Below, piece after piece: positions 37,206 to 46,387 of a DNA stretch of 64,000 nt. Location of the stretch: IMG/VR virus record IMGVR_UViG_3300029908_000004, positions 62,001 through 126,000 of that record. One strand, 5' to 3'. The notes beneath the pieces are model-generated. The model had not been told where the DNA came from and did no database searches. It was given only the letters and a program-made list of their open reading frames with translations. Every line of letters starts with the position of its first letter. The stretch's first letter is position 1. A program made the translations under genes and the position numbers.

Positions 37206-38345
37206 TCAACCAACGTTGTTGGTTGGTTGTTGTGTCTCCTCTGTTGAGGAGTTTGATGGGAGAATCCTCCCATATACTCCTTTGTCGATGGCCTTGATGT
37301 AACCTCTGTCCTTTAACGATTGGACAGTGGCATATATCGGTTGCTTTCTTGTACCGATGTCCATGCCACGACTGGCGAGTAGTTTGATGAGAGCCAGAAC
37401 ATCGAATGTTTTCTCTGGTTCTTTCTCCCATTCCTCCATAATCGTCCTTACCATATCCGTTGGCTTGTAAGGACTCAGTATGCGGGAATGTGTTTGTTTC
37501 TTTGGCTCGGTAGCCTTCGCTAAAGCTTGTTTCTGGAAGACAGACAAGAATGGTTCTACCTTCTTGCTCTCTTCCATGGCTAGGTCATACCAGTTTAACA
37601 ACTCGTTGACCATTGACATTTGTTGGACTGCCTCAGCCTTAACAGCTTCGGCAGTATCGATTATTCGCCGGGCTTCCGCGAACTGCTCCTCACAGCGAAT
37701 AATCCGCCGCTCTAAATCCTGCTTGAGTTCGCGAGCGCCGGCTATTCTTAAATCCAGAATACTCGGCATCTCTTCACTCCCCTTCGTTGGTTTAACAGTA
37801 TTCACTTCACCCAACTCACGTTGTTCTGCCAAGTAGGCGTTCATTGCTGGCATCCCGTTTTCGTTACGAATGCGGGCTGCTTCAGCAAGAACTTCTTGTT
37901 TATAAGTGAACACTTGACCTTTGGGTTTACTCTCCCGAACCTTCCGTATTGGATGATACACCAATACTTCTGGTTCCGTCTCCACCTTGGGTTTTGGCAC
38001 AAGCTTGGCCAACTCCTCAAGATTACGTAGAGCTTGCTCTTCCACAGCAGACTTGCTAACAACTAGCAACTGCTTGTGTACAGATTTCTTCGCCTTCTTC
38101 TTTACCACTTTGGCGACCAAGGTTACTGCCTTGTAAGGTTTCGCCTTTGGCTTGATGCCAAGCATCCCCTTTAACTCAGCCAAGTGGTTAGCGTATGACC
38201 TATACGCTGAAGGCGTCTTTGACAAAACGAATGTTTCGCCGTTGGATAGCGTGTATACATAGTGCTTCTTCTGCCTTACGCAGGTAGCACCATCCCGCTT
38301 TAAGATAGCTTCGATTTGGTCCTTAGGCGGCTTAACTGTTGACAT
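37206..38345 (-). CDS. multi-domain protein: HicA-like N-terminus, coiled coil, C-terminal winged helix
   Basis: LKRDGATCVRQKKHYVYTLSNG..FVLSKTPS HicA-like pattern; IYATVQSLKDRGYIKAIDKGVY wHTH-like. Confidence 0.6.
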   Translation of the reverse strand: MSTVKPPKDQIEAILKRDGATCVRQKKHYVYTLSNGETFVLSKTPSAYRSYANHLAELKGMLGIKPKAKPYKAVTLVAKVVKKKAKKSVHKQLLVVSKSAVEEQALRNLEELAKLVPKPKVETEPEVLVYHPIRKVRESKPKGQVFTYKQEVLAEAARIRNENGMPAMNAYLAEQRELGEVNTVKPTKGSEEMPSILDLRIAGARELKQDLERRIIRCEEQFAEARRIIDTAEAVKAEAVQQMSMVNELLNWYDLAMEESKKVEPFLSVFQKQALAKATEPKKQTHSRILSPYKPTDMVRTIMEEWEKEPEKTFDVLALIKLLASRGMDIGTRKQPIYATVQSLKDRGYIKAIDKGVYGRILPSNSSTEETQQPTNNVG

Positions 38346-38351
38346 ACCACC

Positions 38352-38654
38352 TCACAGTTGACAGATTGTTTTGTTCTTGTAGCCCGGATCTCTGAGATAA
38401 CTTACGATCCGGCGTAGCAAGCCCTTCCAAACGATGTTCGCAGTTGGGCTGCATGTATCACAGCATCTACGTAGAACATCCCAGTGTCTGTAACAAACGA
38501 GCCGATCACAATGTTCACAAACGTATTCCATGGGTAATTTACAATCACCCATCTTTTGCACTGGCGTAACCAGTCGGAATTCCATTCCTTTTGGCACGTT
38601 ACCAGTGTAAAAACCTGTTGTCTTCCCATCCGTTCCAACTAACAATTGAGCCAT
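38352..38654 (-). CDS. zinc-finger hypothetical protein
   Basis: CEHC, CYRH, CDTC motifs; GAGGTG RBS. Confidence 0.65.
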   Translation of the reverse strand: MAQLLVGTDGKTTGFYTGNVPKGMEFRLVTPVQKMGDCKLPMEYVCEHCDRLVCYRHWDVLRRCCDTCSPTANIVWKGLLRRIVSYLRDPGYKNKTICQL

Positions 38655-38783: not shown

Positions 38784-39575
38784 CTAAGCTTTCAGGTTGA
38801 GCACCTCTGCTTGGTCCACTCGGAACTTGCCACATTCGAGGCTTCGTACGCTGCCGAGTCCACAGTTGCTACTCATGGCGAGAATACTGAGGATGTCATC
38901 CTCATTGACCTTGCCCGGAACGAATCGGTACACGAAGTGAATGCGACTTCCTTCTGGAGCCACTTCACTGTCATGGACGATTGATGCCGCGCCTTTGGGT
39001 GTTTGAACACGACCCATGAACGTCTCGAAGTGCGTTTTCACTGGTTCGCCGGCTGGCGTTACCATGTAGACATGGTTCGGATGGTCGCTGTCGATCAACG
39101 ATTGACCGACTGCTCTGACACGCCCACCTTCGGAGAAGTTACCCTTGGTGCCGATTTTGCCCTTGAATAAGCCTGTTCTGCTGGCTGCCTGCTTGAGCAT
39201 GGCCTTCATCATCCAGTCACCAAGCCAGACGCCCTTGTCGCTGTGCCGTAACACGTTGACGCCGTAAGATTCCACTTCGACAATCTCTGGCGCTGCCGCC
39301 GTTACCGAAGCTTCACTGCTTGGGTCAACCTGAATGGTTGGTTTCTTCTCACCAACCTCTTGTTTGAGTATACGCCTAACGGCCTCCTCGAACAAGATTT
39401 TCTGTTCTTCCGTTTCCTGCGGTAGCTTCATCTGAAAGGCGACGAATGCTCGTACACCTTCTTCACCGCCGGGTTGTCCACCGACAACCTTCGTTAAGAA
39501 TGTTGCGTGAATTTCCAATGATGCAGTGAGGCCTATAAAGCGTCCCTCCACATCGTCCGATGTAAATGTAGCCAT
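38784..39575 (-). CDS. stand-alone Cas7/RAMP-like RNA-binding protein (putative effector of the adjacent array)
   Basis: N-terminal strand TFLTKVVGG; VWLGDWMMKAMLKQAA (cf. RAMP IPGSSLKGALR); SEVAPEGSRIHF (cf. E.VP.G..F); C-terminal Gly-rich loop GLGSVRSLECGKF (cf. GLG..RS.GYG.F); no other cas gene in the window. Confidence 0.85.
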   Translation of the reverse strand: MATFTSDDVEGRFIGLTASLEIHATFLTKVVGGQPGGEEGVRAFVAFQMKLPQETEEQKILFEEAVRRILKQEVGEKKPTIQVDPSSEASVTAAAPEIVEVESYGVNVLRHSDKGVWLGDWMMKAMLKQAASRTGLFKGKIGTKGNFSEGGRVRAVGQSLIDSDHPNHVYMVTPAGEPVKTHFETFMGRVQTPKGAASIVHDSEVAPEGSRIHFVYRFVPGKVNEDDILSILAMSSNCGLGSVRSLECGKFRVDQAEVLNLKA

Positions 39576-39592
39576 ATAGGCCCCCTTGATTG

Positions 39593-40008
39593 TAAAACTG
39601 TTGAGATGGAAGCGGTGTCACGATGTTTTGCCGCCTCGAAGTATCAGATCACGAGTCGTCAAGTTTTGCTGCTCAGTTCAGTCTTGTAGCGTCTCATCTT
39701 ACCTTGCCACCACGTCTCGTTGAGCCTTGTCTCAACTTGTCACTATGTGGAATTTTGTAATGTCGAGCTGCAATGTTACATGTAATGGAATGTAACCTTG
39801 CCGCCGCGTCCCATACCGCTTTGCATCGGCAGATGTTATCTTGCCGCCAAGTTATACTCTGTGATGTCTAGCCGCTAAGTTAGAACTTAACTCGACATGT
39901 TCTGCCGCTTCGATATATGACATCTTGGATTGCCACTACATACGGAAGAATCACATAACGGACTGCCGCTGTGTATTGACATGATGTATACAGCTTCGGT
40001 TTGCCTCT
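39593..40008 (-). repeat. non-CRISPR guide-like array: 12 x 8-nt RGYGGCAR repeats with 5n-nt pentamer-phased spacers
   Basis: Repeats start (plus coordinates) at 39628, 39666, 39704, 39737, 39765, 39798, 39841, 39869, 39902, 39930, 39963, 40001; spacers are 30,30,25,20,25,35,20,25,20,25,30 nt; all 57 spacer pentamers are NNYNN on the minus strand. Confidence 0.9.
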
Positions 40009-40093
40009 TAGTTCTGGGGGCACCTAGCCCCTGTACTACGGTAGTACTAACCAACTTTGTGATGATCAAACGAATCTCTGCTTATCCCTCCTC

Positions 40094-40417
40094 CTAAACC
40101 GTGTTTTTAATACGGTCTTCGTCGTCCATGATTTCACACTTGCTACACCTTGCTTGGGAAGCAGTGTAAATACCACAGAATTCACAGGTGAACTCGATAT
40201 CACCAGGGTGATCGTGGGTAAAGCCACATACACAAGGGAACCCGAATTCTGGATTACCACAAGCACAAGGCATTGTCTCCCTTTCTGGGTTCCATGATAA
40301 CTCGACCGCCTCCTTACAAATGGGGCAGCACTCGTGTGTTACCCAATGAACTGGTCCATCTACTTCTTTAACGAATCGTTTGCACCAGCCACATAGAACA
40401 AGCACAAAGATCTCCAA
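40094..40417 (-). CDS. Cys-rich zinc-finger protein
   Basis: Multiple CxxC motifs (CGWC, CPIC, CEFC, CSKC). Confidence 0.55.
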   Translation of the reverse strand: MEIFVLVLCGWCKRFVKEVDGPVHWVTHECCPICKEAVELSWNPERETMPCACGNPEFGFPCVCGFTHDHPGDIEFTCEFCGIYTASQARCSKCEIMDDEDRIKNTV

Positions 40418-42226: not shown

Positions 42227-45200
42227 TTATCCCACCTCATCAGGATTAGGTTCTTCGAATGCCTCATAATTCTTCTGAGGCAACAAAGACTCGTGTGATT
42301 CTCTCAGAATCACCATTCCATCTTCCATTGTGAAGCCACCGAACTCTATCCCCTCGTCCTCTAGCCTTACAGGGATAGTTCCAATAGCTTCCATAGTGCT
42401 TAACCGATACACAATACCAGCCTCCTTGATCACAACATCAACCTTAGCTTCGCCAAGGTCATAAGCAAACTCCTCGTCCAAATCCACTGGTACTACAAGC
42501 CCAGTTATTGGACGCAGCTTACGAGTCTTGATATCCATATACTTGATATCCCGACTCGCCTGAATAATCGCATTACCCATGCGCTTAGTCCACAACATAC
42601 CATCTGGGAAGCTCTTTCGCTTCCCCATCTCCTCTCCCTCAACAACATACTGAGCATCTGCGTAGATGGTGTGATACAGATAGCAGAGCAGCTCTACAGC
42701 CATCTGCTTAACAGTGTCATCATCAAACTGTGCCAGATACTCAGCACAATCATTCTCTACCTTCTTATACGCTTCGTTAAGACCCTCTCTGGTCATTGGA
42801 TTACCAGCGCCAAGGATAGCTTTCCAGCCACCTCTCCACACCTGTATATAACCAGGCGCATCTTCACGCTTCCGACCGGGATTGGAACCGAGATAGACAG
42901 CGATGTCCGGGCTATGCCCACCCATCTCAAACACAAATGCTTCATCGGCAGGAGCTACTGATATCCACTCACGCAGCTTCAGACGATCTATCAACACATC
43001 ACGTTTATGTGTTAAGTCTTTCAGACTCTTACACATAAGCGAGTCATAAATGTGATAATCAGCCTTAGCTACCTTAGTGGTGGGGATTCTAAGGGTATCC
43101 TTCCCACTAATACGCTTACCCATAGTAGCAATATATGGATAGATCAGAGTCCCTTCCAATCCAATGTTCTCAACAGGTTCTCTACCTTCCTGTAAGCCAC
43201 TATGGAACTGACGTACAGCATCGCTAACGTTACCAAGTTGAACCAAGATGTTTGCATCCAGAACAACGCCATCAATGACATGTTCCAGATTAGTTTCAAA
43301 CTTCCTCATCTGATAAAGAGGTCTCATCACAAACCACTCACGGGTTGCTTCGAGGTCAGCAATCTTAGCAAGGTTACCAAACCTCTTAGCTTCAGCGATT
43401 TCAGCATCGAGCTGTTCAAACATATATGCCCGATCCGCTGCATTGGACAACCTATTGTCAATCATATTTGCATTAACAACAGGTCCAATTCCAGCACCGC
43501 TCCTCTGCTTCCTATCAATCTGATAAGCAAAGTGCCGATTGTTATACCATTCCTTCACGCCGCGACCGGGGATTTTATAACCTTCAGCTTCTGCTTCTTC
43601 ATCAAACTGACGACGAAGCACAGCTCCTGACTTCTTGATCTTAGCAGTTTCTGGATACGGGTTATCGTTCAATTCCTTGAACTTGTTAACCCAGAATTCA
43701 TCAAATACTACGATGAAGCGATCATCCAGATCACCACCACCTAATCTGGCTAACACTTTGTTACAGCCAGCGCCGAGAATGATAATACCTTTCCCAGCGA
43801 ACCTAGCATAACGCTGATGGTGGATATTCTTGAGAATCACGAATGCATTCTGATTCTCATTTGGTTGTCTATAACAGGCAACCAAAATACCAGCAGGGAT
43901 GTCCATCATACAGCACTCATCTTTACCAATGAGCTCATCCTCAATTGGTAACAGATTCCCTTCCGTATCATGCATATACGGGTCATGGATACAATATCCA
44001 CTAACAGCTACCTTATCCAATGGGATACGTCCACGCTCCATTTGCATGACACGATACATCATGAAGTTGTTAACCCTACGACCCAATCCCGGGTACTTAA
44101 GAGCAGACCATCCATTGATGACCGCTTCTCTCAGCACCCAAGCATCCCAATCAATCATTGAGATCCCATCATTGTAGTAATGCTCATCATCACGTACACT
44201 GTTGATATACTTAACCAACAGCTTCGTGATTTCCTTGTTATCCATCGTCTTGTTCCAATAATCCAGACGGAACAGCTGAGCTTGATAATCAATCATGCCC
44301 GGACGCTCAAAGCGGAAGTTATCCCAGCTTTGCATATCACTGAACGGCATGATCTTCTTCAGCTTACCAAAACAGCCGAAGTAGAACCGCTCATTCTTAA
44401 TCATAGTCTTGGACCCATACACTACGAAGTCATACTCCAAATCCTCCTTATAGACGAAGTTACCCTTCGGCATACCTACATACCTCTCACCAATAGTGCA
44501 CTGCCATGCATCTCCAATACGTGGATGCTTGCTAAGTCCAACAGACTTTGCACCATGTTCTCCTACCAAGCCGCCACCATCCAACCGAGCAGCGTCATCA
44601 TCTGTCAGTCCATCGATGCTATTAAACTTCACGGTAATGATGGCACCGTTATCCAAACGATACACACCAATACCAGCGACAACATCGAACTTAACCGGTT
44701 TACCTAACGCATGCACCCAAGTTGGTGCCATCTCACGGTTTAAATACTTACCCGCTTTCAGGCATTTCTCCAAATCATTGAGCTCAATCCAGATCCCAAC
44801 ACTTCTCAAATCCACTAAATTTGTCATGGCATCAGGAACGAGATAAGCAGTAGCCCTGTCATCTCTCTGATAACCAAACAAACACTTATAGTGGATTCCC
44901 TCGTATTGATACCCACTGTTCATAACTCGCTCTGCTACCGCAGAGTCATCAGTTACAAACTCTATGTAGGTACAGTCTAATGCGTCTTCCAACAGCCATG
45001 GAACTTCCGCATACGGCCCATAAGCTCTGAAGAACTTAGGATCATCGTCAAGTTTTGACCCAAACTTAACTTTATTACGACGATGAGCCTCTGTATACGG
45101 AGTCCGAGTAACAAGCTTCTTGTTACTCTTCATCCATTCAACAACAGCGATCTTCTTTACTCCTCCATCATCCATCTTTACTACCTCCTTTACAACATCC

Positions 45201-46000
45201 TTCTTAACCGGTTCAGTAGGAACCGGAGGATTCAATTTAGTCCAGAGCTGCTCAGGGCTAATACGCACCATAGGTGCATTAACCCGAAGGCAATAACGCC
45301 ATCTGTTGTTAACAGACTCATACATCACACACCAACCACTCGTTAGATACCAAACAGTATCTAACGCATTAGGTTGGAGTGCTCCCTTAACCTTCTCATT
45401 CAAGAAGGCAAATAGTCTCTCCTTAACAGGTACCTCAATAACCGGTACCTTCTCAACAACAGGTTCAATCCGAGGCTCACCAAGCTTGGTAAATGCCTCA
45501 TCCACCACGGTATCAGAGACATATTGGTCGCCAAGCAGTTTCTTTACAATCACATCCTGAGATACCTCGTTCAATTGCTTATCAGCAATAGAACGCATAC
45601 CCCAGCGATTCGCATCAATGTTATGAGCGACAAACGTTGTGCCAATGTCCCAACTCTGGAACCCCGGCATAGACAAAGAAGGCTTACCCACTTCCTTATT
45701 TAGGTAATCCAACAAATTGATTACCTTAGGAGTTTCAGCCTTCTTCTCCACAACTGGCTCAGCCGGCTGAGATACAGGTACCTTCACCAACGCCTTCTCA
45801 GCTTCCAATAGAAGTGTTACCTTAGTCACATTGGACCGGATCCACTTCTTAGCCTCCTCATTCCTAACCGCCCAGATATCGGTATTTTCATAGAACATCA
45901 CCGACAAACCACCGATGACAAACAAAGTCTTGTTACCATCCTGTTTGTCCGCAGAAGCACCCATAGCAGCAAACAACGCAACCAACGTATTAGAATCCAT
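42227..46000 (-). CDS. single-subunit two-barrel RNA polymerase-like protein (YonO / cellular RdRP-like family)
   Basis: Motifs in the family order: RLDGGGLV, AWQCTIG..GMPKG, YRQP, LGGGDLDD, IGPVVN, HVIDG; about 1257 aa; start at MDSN after GGAG. Confidence 0.75.
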   Translation of the reverse strand: MDSNTLVALFAAMGASADKQDGNKTLFVIGGLSVMFYENTDIWAVRNEEAKKWIRSNVTKVTLLLEAEKALVKVPVSQPAEPVVEKKAETPKVINLLDYLNKEVGKPSLSMPGFQSWDIGTTFVAHNIDANRWGMRSIADKQLNEVSQDVIVKKLLGDQYVSDTVVDEAFTKLGEPRIEPVVEKVPVIEVPVKERLFAFLNEKVKGALQPNALDTVWYLTSGWCVMYESVNNRWRYCLRVNAPMVRISPEQLWTKLNPPVPTEPVKKDVVKEVVKMDDGGVKKIAVVEWMKSNKKLVTRTPYTEAHRRNKVKFGSKLDDDPKFFRAYGPYAEVPWLLEDALDCTYIEFVTDDSAVAERVMNSGYQYEGIHYKCLFGYQRDDRATAYLVPDAMTNLVDLRSVGIWIELNDLEKCLKAGKYLNREMAPTWVHALGKPVKFDVVAGIGVYRLDNGAIITVKFNSIDGLTDDDAARLDGGGLVGEHGAKSVGLSKHPRIGDAWQCTIGERYVGMPKGNFVYKEDLEYDFVVYGSKTMIKNERFYFGCFGKLKKIMPFSDMQSWDNFRFERPGMIDYQAQLFRLDYWNKTMDNKEITKLLVKYINSVRDDEHYYNDGISMIDWDAWVLREAVINGWSALKYPGLGRRVNNFMMYRVMQMERGRIPLDKVAVSGYCIHDPYMHDTEGNLLPIEDELIGKDECCMMDIPAGILVACYRQPNENQNAFVILKNIHHQRYARFAGKGIIILGAGCNKVLARLGGGDLDDRFIVVFDEFWVNKFKELNDNPYPETAKIKKSGAVLRRQFDEEAEAEGYKIPGRGVKEWYNNRHFAYQIDRKQRSGAGIGPVVNANMIDNRLSNAADRAYMFEQLDAEIAEAKRFGNLAKIADLEATREWFVMRPLYQMRKFETNLEHVIDGVVLDANILVQLGNVSDAVRQFHSGLQEGREPVENIGLEGTLIYPYIATMGKRISGKDTLRIPTTKVAKADYHIYDSLMCKSLKDLTHKRDVLIDRLKLREWISVAPADEAFVFEMGGHSPDIAVYLGSNPGRKREDAPGYIQVWRGGWKAILGAGNPMTREGLNEAYKKVENDCAEYLAQFDDDTVKQMAVELLCYLYHTIYADAQYVVEGEEMGKRKSFPDGMLWTKRMGNAIIQASRDIKYMDIKTRKLRPITGLVVPVDLDEEFAYDLGEAKVDVVIKEAGIVYRLSTMEAIGTIPVRLEDEGIEFGGFTMEDGMVILRESHESLLPQKNYEAFEEPNPDEVG

Positions 46001-46387
46001 AACACACTCCATGCCCAGAAGGGCATCTCCGTTAGTGGTATGCTTTTCACATCCACGTTTAAGCGTATCTCGTATAACAATACGAGACAGATGTTTCTAG
46101 AGGTTGTTCATCCAATAACCAATAGCAGTTAATACTTCTTCCTTAGTGCCAACGCATACATTCAAAGGCACCGCTATCTTGCTTCCGCCCTCTTCAATAA
46201 ATAGGGCACGGTATTCACCACTCTGTTTATCACGAGCAATGGTGACACGTTGGGAGAAGAACACCCTTCGTACATCAATATCAGACAACGACATTCTATT
46301 CCTCCTTGTTACAGAGCTACCTCTTATAGCAGGTATGCTCAAAGAGTAATACTAGGGACATAACCTAGTATTAAACTCTCAGCATAT

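What the first reader, a model, noticed from the sequence alone, without database searches (positions are those of the whole stretch)
39593..40008. Array spacers follow a strict 5-nt grammar (57/57 pentamers with pyrimidine at position 3), suggesting a gapped guide code
Seen: repeat-to-repeat distances are 38,38,33,28,33,43,28,33,28,33,38 nt, always 8+5n. Split into sense-strand pentamers, spacers read for example GGTAA GATGA GACGC TACAA GACTG AACTG; GACAT TACAA AATTC CACAT; GATAA CATCT GCCGA TGCAA AGCGG TATGG GACGC. Position 3 is C/T in all 57 pentamers, position 2 is A in 36/57, and positions 4-5 are free. The phase continues for 7 more pentamers after the last repeat. The repeat itself parses as RGY+GGC+NN, one extra triplet that resets the phase. 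Spacers copied from foreign DNA could not show this bias. Inference: positions 1-3 are a protein-binding scaffold and the NN dinucleotides carry specificity (one unit gives AA-AA-CT-GA-AA-GG-GG-GC), possibly matching a target with skipped bases such as codon wobble positions. Caveat: the degenerate repeat at 39765 was placed partly by register.
Basis: partly seen in the sequence, partly recalled or inferred. Interest (0 to 1): 0.9.

Follow-up and report, generated by a model that had tools for sequence, protein, structure and literature searches.

The report
Phage VIPR guide-RNA array, non-canonical
The odd 5-base "grammar" is real and marks the guide-RNA array of a VIPR system, a recently described phage RNA-guided DNA-silencing machine related to CRISPR, here in a variant form next to its Cas7-like protein gene.

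Summary
On the minus strand, 39593-40008 parses into 12 octamers (RGY-GGC-AA) and 64 pentamers, and all 64 have a pyrimidine at position 3. This is the top-scoring stretch of the window on both strands, about 10 sd above shuffles.

Homologues at 34-51% identity carry the same grammar beside the gene in 11 of 12 informative loci (N-A-Y-N-N plus an RGY|GGY or RGY|GAC phase break). Four peat and permafrost metatranscriptomes hold the array, three of them at their highest local depth.

So this is a VIPR vrRNA array. It differs from the characterised type II system in four ways: an NAY scaffold instead of GGY, no 3' tail, short modules of 4-7 pentamers, and 3-nt phase-break punctuation. A second preprint already noted GAC/NN arrays in silico.

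Natural targets were not found. My gapped searches were underpowered and stayed at chance level.

The parts
39593..40008 (-). vrRNA array: 12 phase-break octamers plus 64 N-A-Y-N-N pentamers, in modules of 4-7 pentamers (416 nt)
   Evidence: grammar and statistics; spanned by the longest contig in all four metatranscriptomes, highest local depth in three; no RNA secondary structure beyond shuffles, z -0.11.
38784..39575 (-). vipr gene: 263-aa stand-alone Cas7-like RAMP (P0001). G-loop G239-L-G241-S242-V243-R244...G249-K-F. Low-confidence loop at about residues 71-100 is the likely thumb.
40001..40008 (-). Octamer 1, AGAGGCAA (start of array)
39963..39970 (-). Octamer 2, AGCGGCAG
39930..39937 (-). 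Octamer 3, AGTGGCAA
39902..39909 (-). Octamer 4, AGCGGCAG
39869..39876 (-). Octamer 5, AGCGGCTA
39841..39848 (-). Octamer 6, GGCGGCAA
39798..39805 (-). Octamer 7, GGCGGCAA
39760..39772 (-). Degenerate phase break 8: TGC|AGC-TC at 39772 or CTC|GAC-AT at 39767. The position is ambiguous by 5 nt.
   Evidence: re-read by eye from the parse
39737..39744 (-). Octamer 9, AGTGACAA in the window; AGTGGCAA in other samples (SNP at 39740)
39704..39711 (-). Octamer 10, GGTGGCAA. Population variants: GGC>GAC (39707) and GGC>GGT (39706).
39666..39673 (-). Octamer 11, AGCAGCAA (degenerate)
39628..39635 (-). Octamer 12, GGCGGCAA, followed by 7 in-phase pentamers down to 39593
39576..39592 (-). Short linker with a ribosome-binding site (AAGGGGG) before the vipr ATG at 39575
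40016..40047 (-). Two perfect short hairpins between the upstream ORF and the array. Role unknown: terminator of the upstream gene or a 5' cap of the array. RNA contigs run through them.
38352..38654 (-). 100-aa ORF downstream of vipr, weakly zinc-ribbon-like. Candidate accessory (vap) gene, low confidence.
   Evidence: No homologue next to vipr in the other loci.
37206..38345 (-). 379-aa ORF with a weak HicA-like N-terminus; function unknown. Candidate accessory gene, low confidence.

Best explanation
This is a VIPR (Viral Interference Programmable Repeat) locus of a roughly 215-kb peat phage.

Shown here:
- The 416-nt minus-strand tract has a strict pentamer grammar.
- The adjacent 263-aa protein has a Vipr-type RAMP fold.
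- The array and the protein co-occur across relatives.
- The array is present at raised depth in RNA libraries.

Inferred mechanism:
1. The tract is transcribed as a long RNA, a vrRNA array.
2. The 263-aa protein is a minimal Cas7-like RAMP (Vipr) that polymerises on the RNA, one protomer per pentamer.
3. A pocket that sterically excludes purines holds position 3. That would explain the 64/64 pyrimidines.
4. Position 2 is preferred as A, and position 1 is not read.
5. The two following bases (NN) are presented for pairing with double-stranded DNA. One target base is skipped per pentamer.
6. The complex would then silence genes of competing phages or mobile elements.

My own inference, not tested: a scaffold triplet that lacks its NN (RGY followed directly by GGY, or by GAC in relatives) shifts the register by 3 nt. 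This divides the transcript into 12 modules of 4-7 pentamers. These breaks would act as filament or processing boundaries, in place of the structured 3' tail of type II vrRNAs.
For: Grammar and its significance.

The nearest of 2.3 million AlphaFold DB clusters are A0A1F4YLN4 (1e-11), A0A2D6XG06 (5e-11) and A0A0F9A1L0. A0A661D0E2 and X1U2U4 rank 12 and 16. These are the five founder Vipr hits listed in the preprint's methods.

The same array-plus-gene arrangement, co-oriented, occurs in L002, L003 (1.6 kb, 48 phase breaks), L004, L006-L010, L022 and L023. L009 has a second array downstream, and L012 has its array downstream.

Spacing between anchors is 3 mod 5 in 144/189 cases, and 25/25 in L004. 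All nine arrays tested (the window plus L002-L004 and L006-L010) beat shuffles by 7 to 28 sd.

In near-duplicate units, positions 2 and 3 differ in 6-7% of pentamers, against 22-32% for positions 1, 4 and 5.

The structural preprint describes a Y3 pocket that excludes purines, G1 read by D177, G2 stacked on W178 and Y3 contacted by R179. hhalign places S242, A/V243 and R/K244 of this family on those three residues. S242 is invariant and residue 244 is basic in 44/44 sequences. That fits the loss of G1/G2 reading with Y3 kept.

The array RNA is unstructured (z -0.11), as expected for a protein-bound guide.

In four metatranscriptomes the array is spanned by the longest contig in the 5.5-kb stretch. 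It has the highest depth in three of them, and other parts have none.

A second preprint reports GAC/NN and CAC/NN arrays beside Vipr-like folds.
Against: - No natural target was found. Exact one-skip patterns from long units of relatives gave 0 hits.
- The window's longest unit gave 32 hits that collapse to about 10 independent families, with chance-level codon phase.
- Local scans showed no excess over shuffled guides.
- Modules carry only 8-14 informative bases, which is short for a specific guide.
- Sequence similarity to SUSP1 Vipr is not significant (hhalign E 0.043, probability 1%), so family membership rests on fold.
- The RNA evidence comes from assembled contigs. It gives no strand and no ends, and DNA carry-over cannot be excluded.
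- No conserved accessory gene was identified in the window.
Confidence: 0.85

Rival explanations
1. The array is an RNA leader, decoy or sponge rather than a set of guides. The Vipr-like protein coats its own 5' leader for autoregulation. Alternatively, the transcript titrates Vipr complexes of competing phages. In either case NN would carry no target information.
For: The array sits in the 5' untranslated region of vipr and ends 17 nt before its start codon. Modules are short (8-14 informative bases). No targets were found. Solo vrRNAs that redirect a VIPR system are described in 10.64898/2026.10.15.759431.
Against: NN and position 1 diverge quickly between duplicated units while A-Y is held, as expected for information-bearing or free positions. 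NN composition fits sense codon positions 1-2 best overall (summed log-likelihood -3084.6 against -3103.0 for the next model), but weakly. Arrays reach 1.6 kb with 48 modules, far more than autoregulation needs. L009 and L012 carry arrays downstream of the gene. In characterised VIPRs the same architecture guides DNA binding.
Confidence: 0.1
2. The tract works as DNA. It would be an iteron, origin or centromere-like array bound by the neighbouring protein, or an array of primase or Chi-like sites. The opposite strand reads NN-GTC-like pentamers, and the punctuation contains AGCGG.
For: In L003 and L009 the locus lies between recombination genes (YqaJ) and replication genes (HTH_36, DnaB). Short-period arrays are known from plasmid centromeres (from my own knowledge, not tested here).
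Against: The protein has an RRM-based RAMP fold whose relatives bind single-stranded RNA. The grammar is strand-specific and always co-oriented with the gene. C/T equivalence at one position is the signature of the published purine-excluding RNA pocket. The array is over-represented in RNA libraries. The neighbourhood is not conserved across loci.
Confidence: 0.03
3. The periodicity is a chance or compositional artefact, or the relic of a decayed pentanucleotide microsatellite with no function.
For: Runs of 11-20 same-class bases at period 5 occur elsewhere in the window by chance.
Against: 64/64 across 12 register shifts, each at the same motif. The score is about 10 sd above shuffles and is the top natural window. 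The same grammar recurs beside homologous genes at 34-51% protein identity even though the array sequences are unrelated. Neutral decay would erode position 3 as much as the other positions.
Confidence: 0.01

Closest known systems
VIPR type II systems (Escherichia phage SUSP1, Pseudomonas fulva prophage): Vipr protein plus vrRNA (bioRxiv 10.64898/2026.04.26.720920 and 10.64898/2026.04.26.720927)
   Same: Both are phage-encoded and lack cas genes and a CRISPR array. Both have a single small RAMP with a G-loop and a thumb-like loop. Both have tandem pentamers with a fixed triplet ending in an obligatory pyrimidine followed by a variable NN, beside the gene and on the same strand. I located the SUSP1 locus (KT454805.2, 27.5-29.3 kb, minus strand) and confirmed its GGT-NN tracts as a positive control.
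   Different: - The scaffold here is N-A-Y; GGY appears only at the phase breaks.
- There is no conserved structured 3' tail or pseudoknot.
- Modules have 4-7 pentamers (up to about 14 in relatives) instead of 9-16.
- Modules are chained without gaps into one 0.4-1.6 kb tract, separated by a 3-nt register shift.
- The protein is larger (263 against 195 aa) and not detectably similar in sequence.
- The G-loop has S and A/V where SUSP1 has the G-reading D177 and W178.
Non-canonical VIPR-like arrays (GAC/NN, CAC/NN) found by a genomic language model (bioRxiv 10.64898/2026.10.21.760802)
   Same: Period-5 arrays with a fixed triplet such as GAC or CAC, next to a protein with a Vipr-like fold. Relatives of this locus are dominated by GAC, AAC, CAC and TAC triplets, so this is very probably the same clade.
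   Different: That report is purely computational. In the text available to me it does not mention the RGY|GGY phase break, the 8+5n spacing, the module structure or the G-loop substitutions. In the AT-richer window the triplet relaxes to N-A(61%)-Y, and only Y is strict.
Class 1 CRISPR backbone filaments (Cas7 family: Csm3, Cmr4, Csf2, type VII Cas7)
   Different: The step is 5 nt, not 6. In VIPR three guide bases are sequestered per step rather than one flipped. There is no long repeat, no spacer acquired from foreign DNA, no Cas5, Cas6, Cas1 or Cas2, and no other cas genes among the 10 neighbours scanned.
TIGR-Tas tandem interspaced guide RNA arrays
   Same: A phage-associated, non-CRISPR array of short guide units read by one protein family.
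   Different: TIGR has an 18/36-nt period and a Nop-domain effector. Here the period is 5 nt and the effector is a RAMP (comparison drawn and my own knowledge; not tested further).
TRAP (trp RNA-binding attenuation protein) sites, (G/U)AG + NN
   Same: A triplet plus a 2-nt spacer gives a 5-nt periodic RNA grammar read by an oligomer. This was my first working analogy.
   Different: The protein fold here is a RAMP, not a TRAP beta-sandwich ring. The arrays are tens to hundreds of units long.

Membership tests
VIPR (Vipr + vrRNA) | The protein is closer to Vipr proteins than to CRISPR RAMPs | tested here: met
   The AlphaFold DB cluster search returns the five founder Vipr accessions at ranks 1, 2, 3, 12 and 16 (one search compared). 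At sequence level versus SUSP1 Vipr the result is inconclusive (hhalign E 0.043).
VIPR (Vipr + vrRNA) | Tandem pentamers (at least 4) with a fixed triplet alternating with variable NN, next to vipr | tested here: met
   64 pentamers in phase. Same arrangement in 11 of 12 informative homologous loci.
VIPR (Vipr + vrRNA) | Canonical GGY triplet (or the listed variants NNNGG, YNNNG, NNNNG) | tested here: not met
   Body pentamers are N-A-Y (A 61% in the window, 74-88% in six of the eight relatives; G 6-23%). GGY occurs only as the inserted triplet at phase breaks. The pattern does match the GAC/NN and CAC/NN non-canonical class of 10.64898/2026.10.21.760802.
VIPR (Vipr + vrRNA) | Obligatory pyrimidine at triplet position 3 | tested here: met
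   64/64. Over 93% of parsed pentamers in all relatives except L002 (88%).
VIPR (Vipr + vrRNA) | Conserved structured 3' tail capping each vrRNA (a type II feature) | tested here: not met
   Modules abut one another. The whole tract folds no better than shuffles (z -0.11). There is no Rfam match, so no hammerhead.
VIPR (Vipr + vrRNA) | The array is expressed as RNA and bound by the protein | tested here: inconclusive
   Four metatranscriptomes hold it, three at their highest local depth, in contigs of 431-698 nt. There is no strand, end or binding information. Complex prediction was not folded.
VIPR (Vipr + vrRNA) | NN pair with a DNA target with one skipped base per unit, usually the codon wobble position | tested here: inconclusive
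   No significant target. One candidate: a 9-NN unit of L009 matches terL of three related phages 9/9 with the skipped base at the wobble position. That is within chance expectation. The NN composition test is weakly positive.
VIPR (Vipr + vrRNA) | Phage-encoded, minimal locus, no cas genes or CRISPR array; usually one accessory vap gene | tested here: inconclusive
   The contig is an IMG/VR viral contig. Ten neighbours have no Pfam family, and PADLOC on seven of them gave only a HicA-like hit, no Cas. No vap could be assigned. A conserved roughly 80-aa upstream ORF occurs in 5 relatives but not in the window.
CRISPR-Cas | Direct repeats of over 20 nt alternating with spacers derived from foreign DNA; cas1/cas2 or an effector module | tested here: not met
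   The 'repeats' are 8 nt. The 'spacers' obey a strict internal grammar. TRF finds no repeats. There are no cas families nearby.
Type III toxin-antitoxin (ToxIN-like) | Near-identical repeats of 34-45 nt upstream of an endoribonuclease toxin | tested here: not met
   Units differ in length and sequence. The protein is a RAMP with no PADLOC hit.

The most novel reading that the evidence does not exclude
This clade would be a distinct, tail-less, multi-guide VIPR architecture.

- Guide boundaries are written into the RNA as a 3-nt phase break: a scaffold triplet without its NN, immediately followed by a canonical GGY (or GAC) triplet. They are not marked by a structured tail or a ribozyme.
- Many very short guides (4-8 NN) are strung on one transcript of up to 1.6 kb.
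- The change of scaffold code from GGY to N-A-Y is mirrored by G-loop substitutions (D177 to Ser, W178 to Ala/Val, Arg kept).

If true, the Vipr-RNA scaffold code is itself evolvable. The short modules would imply either cooperative multi-site targeting or a transcription-factor-like level of specificity.
Probability: 0.4. Interest if true: 0.65.

Novelty: new member of a known kind. Interest (0 to 1): 0.55.

Why it matters
VIPR is a months-old class of RNA-guided DNA recognition, and only type II (GGY/NN plus a tail) has been characterised. This locus and its roughly 500 relatives at 50% clustering show three things:

- The same fold reads a different scaffold triplet. Only the pyrimidine is strictly kept.
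- Arrays can be very long.
- Unit boundaries can be encoded as a bare register shift.

That gives testable rules for how Vipr reads its RNA, through the G-loop residues 242-244. It also bears on how guides are delimited and on how short a functional gapped guide can be. These points matter for understanding phage-phage conflict and for engineering VIPR-based tools. For the scan itself, it shows that a reader working from sequence alone recovered a real RNA-guide grammar.

Tried and rejected
Searches that found nothing:
- Tandem Repeats Finder: nothing.
- Rfam at E up to 1: nothing.
- blastn and tblastn against 50,697 phage records: nothing.
- Pfam, PHROGs and PADLOC on the neighbours: essentially blank.
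- Profile search of PDB sequences: nothing. Only fold comparison revealed the RAMP.

Ideas considered before the fold result and dropped:
- A TRAP-like ring protein on a (triplet + NN) RNA.
- A 5-nt-per-subunit coat-protein-like filament.
- An array of T7-type primase pentamers (NNGTC on the opposite strand).
- Chi-like AGCGG sites.
- Replication iterons or a centromere.
- A ToxI-like antitoxin array.
- Unconventional translation. There is no long ORF in the window's array. The ORF called inside the L003 array is probably spurious.

Target hunting:
- Exact one-skip patterns for two long units of relatives gave 0 hits in viral contigs and 0 hits in genome contigs.
- Three L009 units gave 4, 8 and 4 hits with no convergence.
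- The window's longest unit gave 32 hits at chance level.
- Read-through of two adjacent window modules, with a 2-nt or a 1-nt gap at the break, gave 0 hits in metagenome contigs.
- Position 1 as a paired base is not supported. It matches 1 of 9 skipped bases in the terL candidate (read by eye), and its composition is not wobble-like.

Other:
It is no evidence either way.
- The alignment was too divergent for a genome contigs protein scan.

Full report
**1. The observation**

The genes of this part of the window run on the minus strand, so I read that strand. The 490-nt gap between ORF 40094-40417 and ORF 38784-39575 contains a 416-nt tract, 40008 down to 39593. It parses without remainder into 12 octamers and 64 pentamers.

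The octamers have the consensus R-G-Y-G-G-C-A-A. Nine are good and three are degenerate (TGCAGCTC, AGTGACAA, AGCAGCAA). All 64 pentamers have C or T at position 3 (C 39, T 25), and A is at position 2 in 39.

Pyrimidines make up 37% of the other four positions, so 64/64 has a chance of about 1e-28. A dynamic-programming parse that permits a +3 shift only at Y-GG-Y scores 31, against -64.8 +/- 9.6 for shuffles. Among all 440-nt windows of the 64-kb sequence on both strands, the array scores 42 and the next non-overlapping window scores 9.

TRF sees nothing because the units are not similar to each other. A +3 shift is needed there in either case.

**2. The neighbouring protein and its relatives**

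The ORF that starts 17 nt after the last pentamer (263 aa, P0001) has no Pfam, PHROG, PADLOC or PDB-sequence match. It does have 64 homologues at 34-51% identity in metagenomes. A profile search finds 535 cluster representatives at E up to 1e-3. The ESM Atlas assigns its clusters to viruses, 97-100% where a taxon is known.

I fetched homologous loci. Eleven of the twelve with enough flank carry the same kind of tract beside the gene, on the same strand:
- Upstream in L002, L003, L004, L006-L010, L022 and L023.
- Both upstream and downstream in L009, and downstream in L012.
- L011 has none within 5 kb.

The array sequences are unrelated between loci, but the grammar is the same. Pentamers read N-A-Y-N-N, with A at 74-88% and C at 62-91% of Y in six of the eight relatives parsed; L002 and L010 are weaker. 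The pentamer runs are interrupted by A/G-G-C directly followed by G-G-C. In the most distant members the following triplet is G-A-C instead.

Distances between these anchors are 3 mod 5 in 144 of 189 cases, and in 25 of 25 in L004. L003 has 48 such breaks over 1.6 kb. The punctuation is therefore best described as a scaffold triplet that lacks its NN.

Population variants of the window's own array flip the inserted triplet. They change GGC to GAC (39707), GAC to GGC (39740) and GGC to GGT (39706).

**3. What the protein is**

AlphaFold2 with the 44-sequence alignment gives a confident model (pLDDT 89.6, pTM 0.82).

- Foldseek against the PDB returns only CRISPR RAMP subunits in the top 50, mostly Cas7-type: type VII Cas7, Csm3, Cmr4 and Csf2, with E down to 2e-6.
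- Against 2.3 million AlphaFold DB clusters, the best three hits are A0A1F4YLN4, A0A2D6XG06 and A0A0F9A1L0. A0A661D0E2 and X1U2U4 rank 12 and 16.

**4. The literature**

A full-text search found bioRxiv 10.64898/2026.04.26.720920. It describes VIPR systems as follows:
- A phage-encoded minimal RAMP (Vipr) and vrRNAs made of 9-16 GGY/NN pentamers plus a 3' tail.
- NN pairs with dsDNA and one target base per unit is skipped, usually at the codon wobble position.
- The systems are used to silence competing phages and satellites.

Its methods name the five UniProt entries above as the founder Vipr hits.

The companion structural preprint, 10.64898/2026.04.26.720927, reports one protomer per pentamer. 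It describes a Y3 pocket that "sterically excludes purines", with G1 read by H17/D177, G2 by R138/W178 and Y3 contacted by R179. The skipped target base sits in a thumb/bundle pocket.

A third preprint, 10.64898/2026.10.21.760802, reports 21 clusters of period-5 arrays with non-canonical triplets "e.g. GAC/NN or CAC/NN" next to Vipr-like folds. That is very probably this clade.

As a positive control I located the SUSP1 locus (KT454805.2) and saw its GGT-NN tracts and tails.

**5. How this locus differs from the characterised type**

- The scaffold is N-A-Y. GGY occurs only as the inserted triplet.
- There is no tail. The whole tract folds no better than shuffles (z -0.11) and contains no Rfam ribozyme.
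- Modules are short, 4-7 pentamers in the window. They are chained head to tail and separated only by the 3-nt phase break.
- Position 1 is as variable as NN. In 13 near-duplicate unit pairs the differences are 32%, 7%, 6%, 28% and 22% for positions 1 to 5.
- The protein is not detectably similar in sequence to SUSP1 Vipr (hhalign E 0.043). The colinear alignment does put the family's invariant G-loop on SUSP1's: S242 on D177, A/V243 on W178 and R/K244 on R179. The residue that contacts Y3 is kept, and the two that read the guanines are replaced. This matches the change in RNA grammar. It is an inference from a weak alignment.

**6. Expression**

The phage comes from peat metagenomes. In four peat and permafrost metatranscriptomes, the array is covered by the longest contig in the 5.5-kb stretch laid (431-698 nt). 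In three of the four it also has the highest depth: 11 against 2-5, 10.7 against 2-7.5 and 6.3 against 2-4. Several neighbouring stretches have no coverage.

In three runs the contig ends at 39555-39584, at the start of vipr. This fits an abundant long array transcript. Contigs carry no strand or end information, and DNA carry-over cannot be excluded.

**7. Targets**

This is the weak point.

- Local scans of the window and the loci show no excess over shuffled guides at skip 0-2. The perfect score at skip 3 is the array matching itself, which I had not masked.
- Collection scans accept only exact patterns.
- Long units of relatives gave no hit.
- The window's longest unit (16 bases) gave 32 hits. 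They collapse to about ten independent families, with codon phase at chance level.
- A 9-NN unit of L009 matches 9/9 in the terminase large-subunit gene of three related phages. It lies on the antisense strand, and every skipped base is at the wobble position. Other L009 units do not converge on those phages. The chance expectation for such a hit is roughly 0.3-0.5, so it is only a candidate.
- Read-through of two window modules, with a 1-nt or a 2-nt gap at the break, found nothing.
- NN composition fits sense codon positions 1-2 best overall, and best in the window, but the margin is small.

**8. Verdict**

The feature is real, strongly non-random, conserved across a large phage protein family, and explained as a VIPR vrRNA array with its Vipr gene.

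It is a new member of a kind described in 2026, from the non-canonical NAC/NN branch that has so far been noted only computationally. I could not find the phase-break punctuation, the module structure or the G-loop correlation in the text available to me. They are worth testing.

Noticed in passing
L009:5870-6700 and L012:5760-5967: Some relatives carry a second NAY/NN array downstream of vipr on the same strand (L009) or only a downstream one (L012). L011 has none within 5 kb. Array position relative to the gene is therefore not fixed.
   Followed up: partly
L008:2605-2770, L008:2567/2848, L007:4794-4899: Neighbouring modules are near-duplicates that differ mainly at NN and position 1. Arrays seem to grow by module duplication followed by divergence of the variable positions.
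   Followed up: partly
L002:4287-4529, L006:4262-4492, L008:2247-2510, L009:4320-4583, L010:582-902: A conserved helical ORF of roughly 80 aa with no Pfam match lies immediately upstream of the array in five relatives. It is a possible accessory (vap-like) gene. There is no homologue in the window.
   Followed up: partly
L026:6237-6262, L027:710-735, L028:4459-4484 (and L025:9680-9705): The 9-NN module of L009 (4583) matches the terminase large-subunit motif PIMILDGDK of three related phages exactly under the one-skip rule, with all skipped bases at codon wobble positions. It is a candidate natural target but lies within chance expectation.
   Followed up: partly
window 39706, 39707, 39740: All three population SNPs seen in the array fall in the inserted triplet of a phase break (GGC/GAC/GGT). 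None was seen in the 64 pentamers.
   Followed up: partly
window 42227-46012 (-): A 1261-aa ORF with no Pfam, PHROG or PADLOC match, in the stretch with the strongest GC skew of the window (-0.24 to -0.30).
   Followed up: no
window 40094-40417 (-) and 38352-38654 (-): Small cysteine-rich ORFs flank the VIPR locus on both sides. The downstream one is weakly zinc-ribbon-like. Both are of unknown function.
   Followed up: partly
window 37206-38345 (-): The N-terminal 60 residues of this 379-aa ORF weakly resemble HicA-like / Ulx-like small proteins (PADLOC 1e-4, PHROG 1e-4 to 6e-3).
   Followed up: no
L030, L033-L037, L040, L041, L044-L046, L048, L049, L051, L054, L056, L058, L060: The 16-base pattern of the window's longest module hits a large family of small (83-131 aa) phage proteins with the motif KNL(E/D)KGGAW. 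I judged this coincidental: the samples are different and the number of independent hits is at chance level.
   Followed up: partly
L003:4138-4989: Gene callers placed a 283-318-aa ORF inside the GC-rich L003 array. It is probably a spurious call caused by the T-poor, stop-poor pentamer grammar.
   Followed up: no
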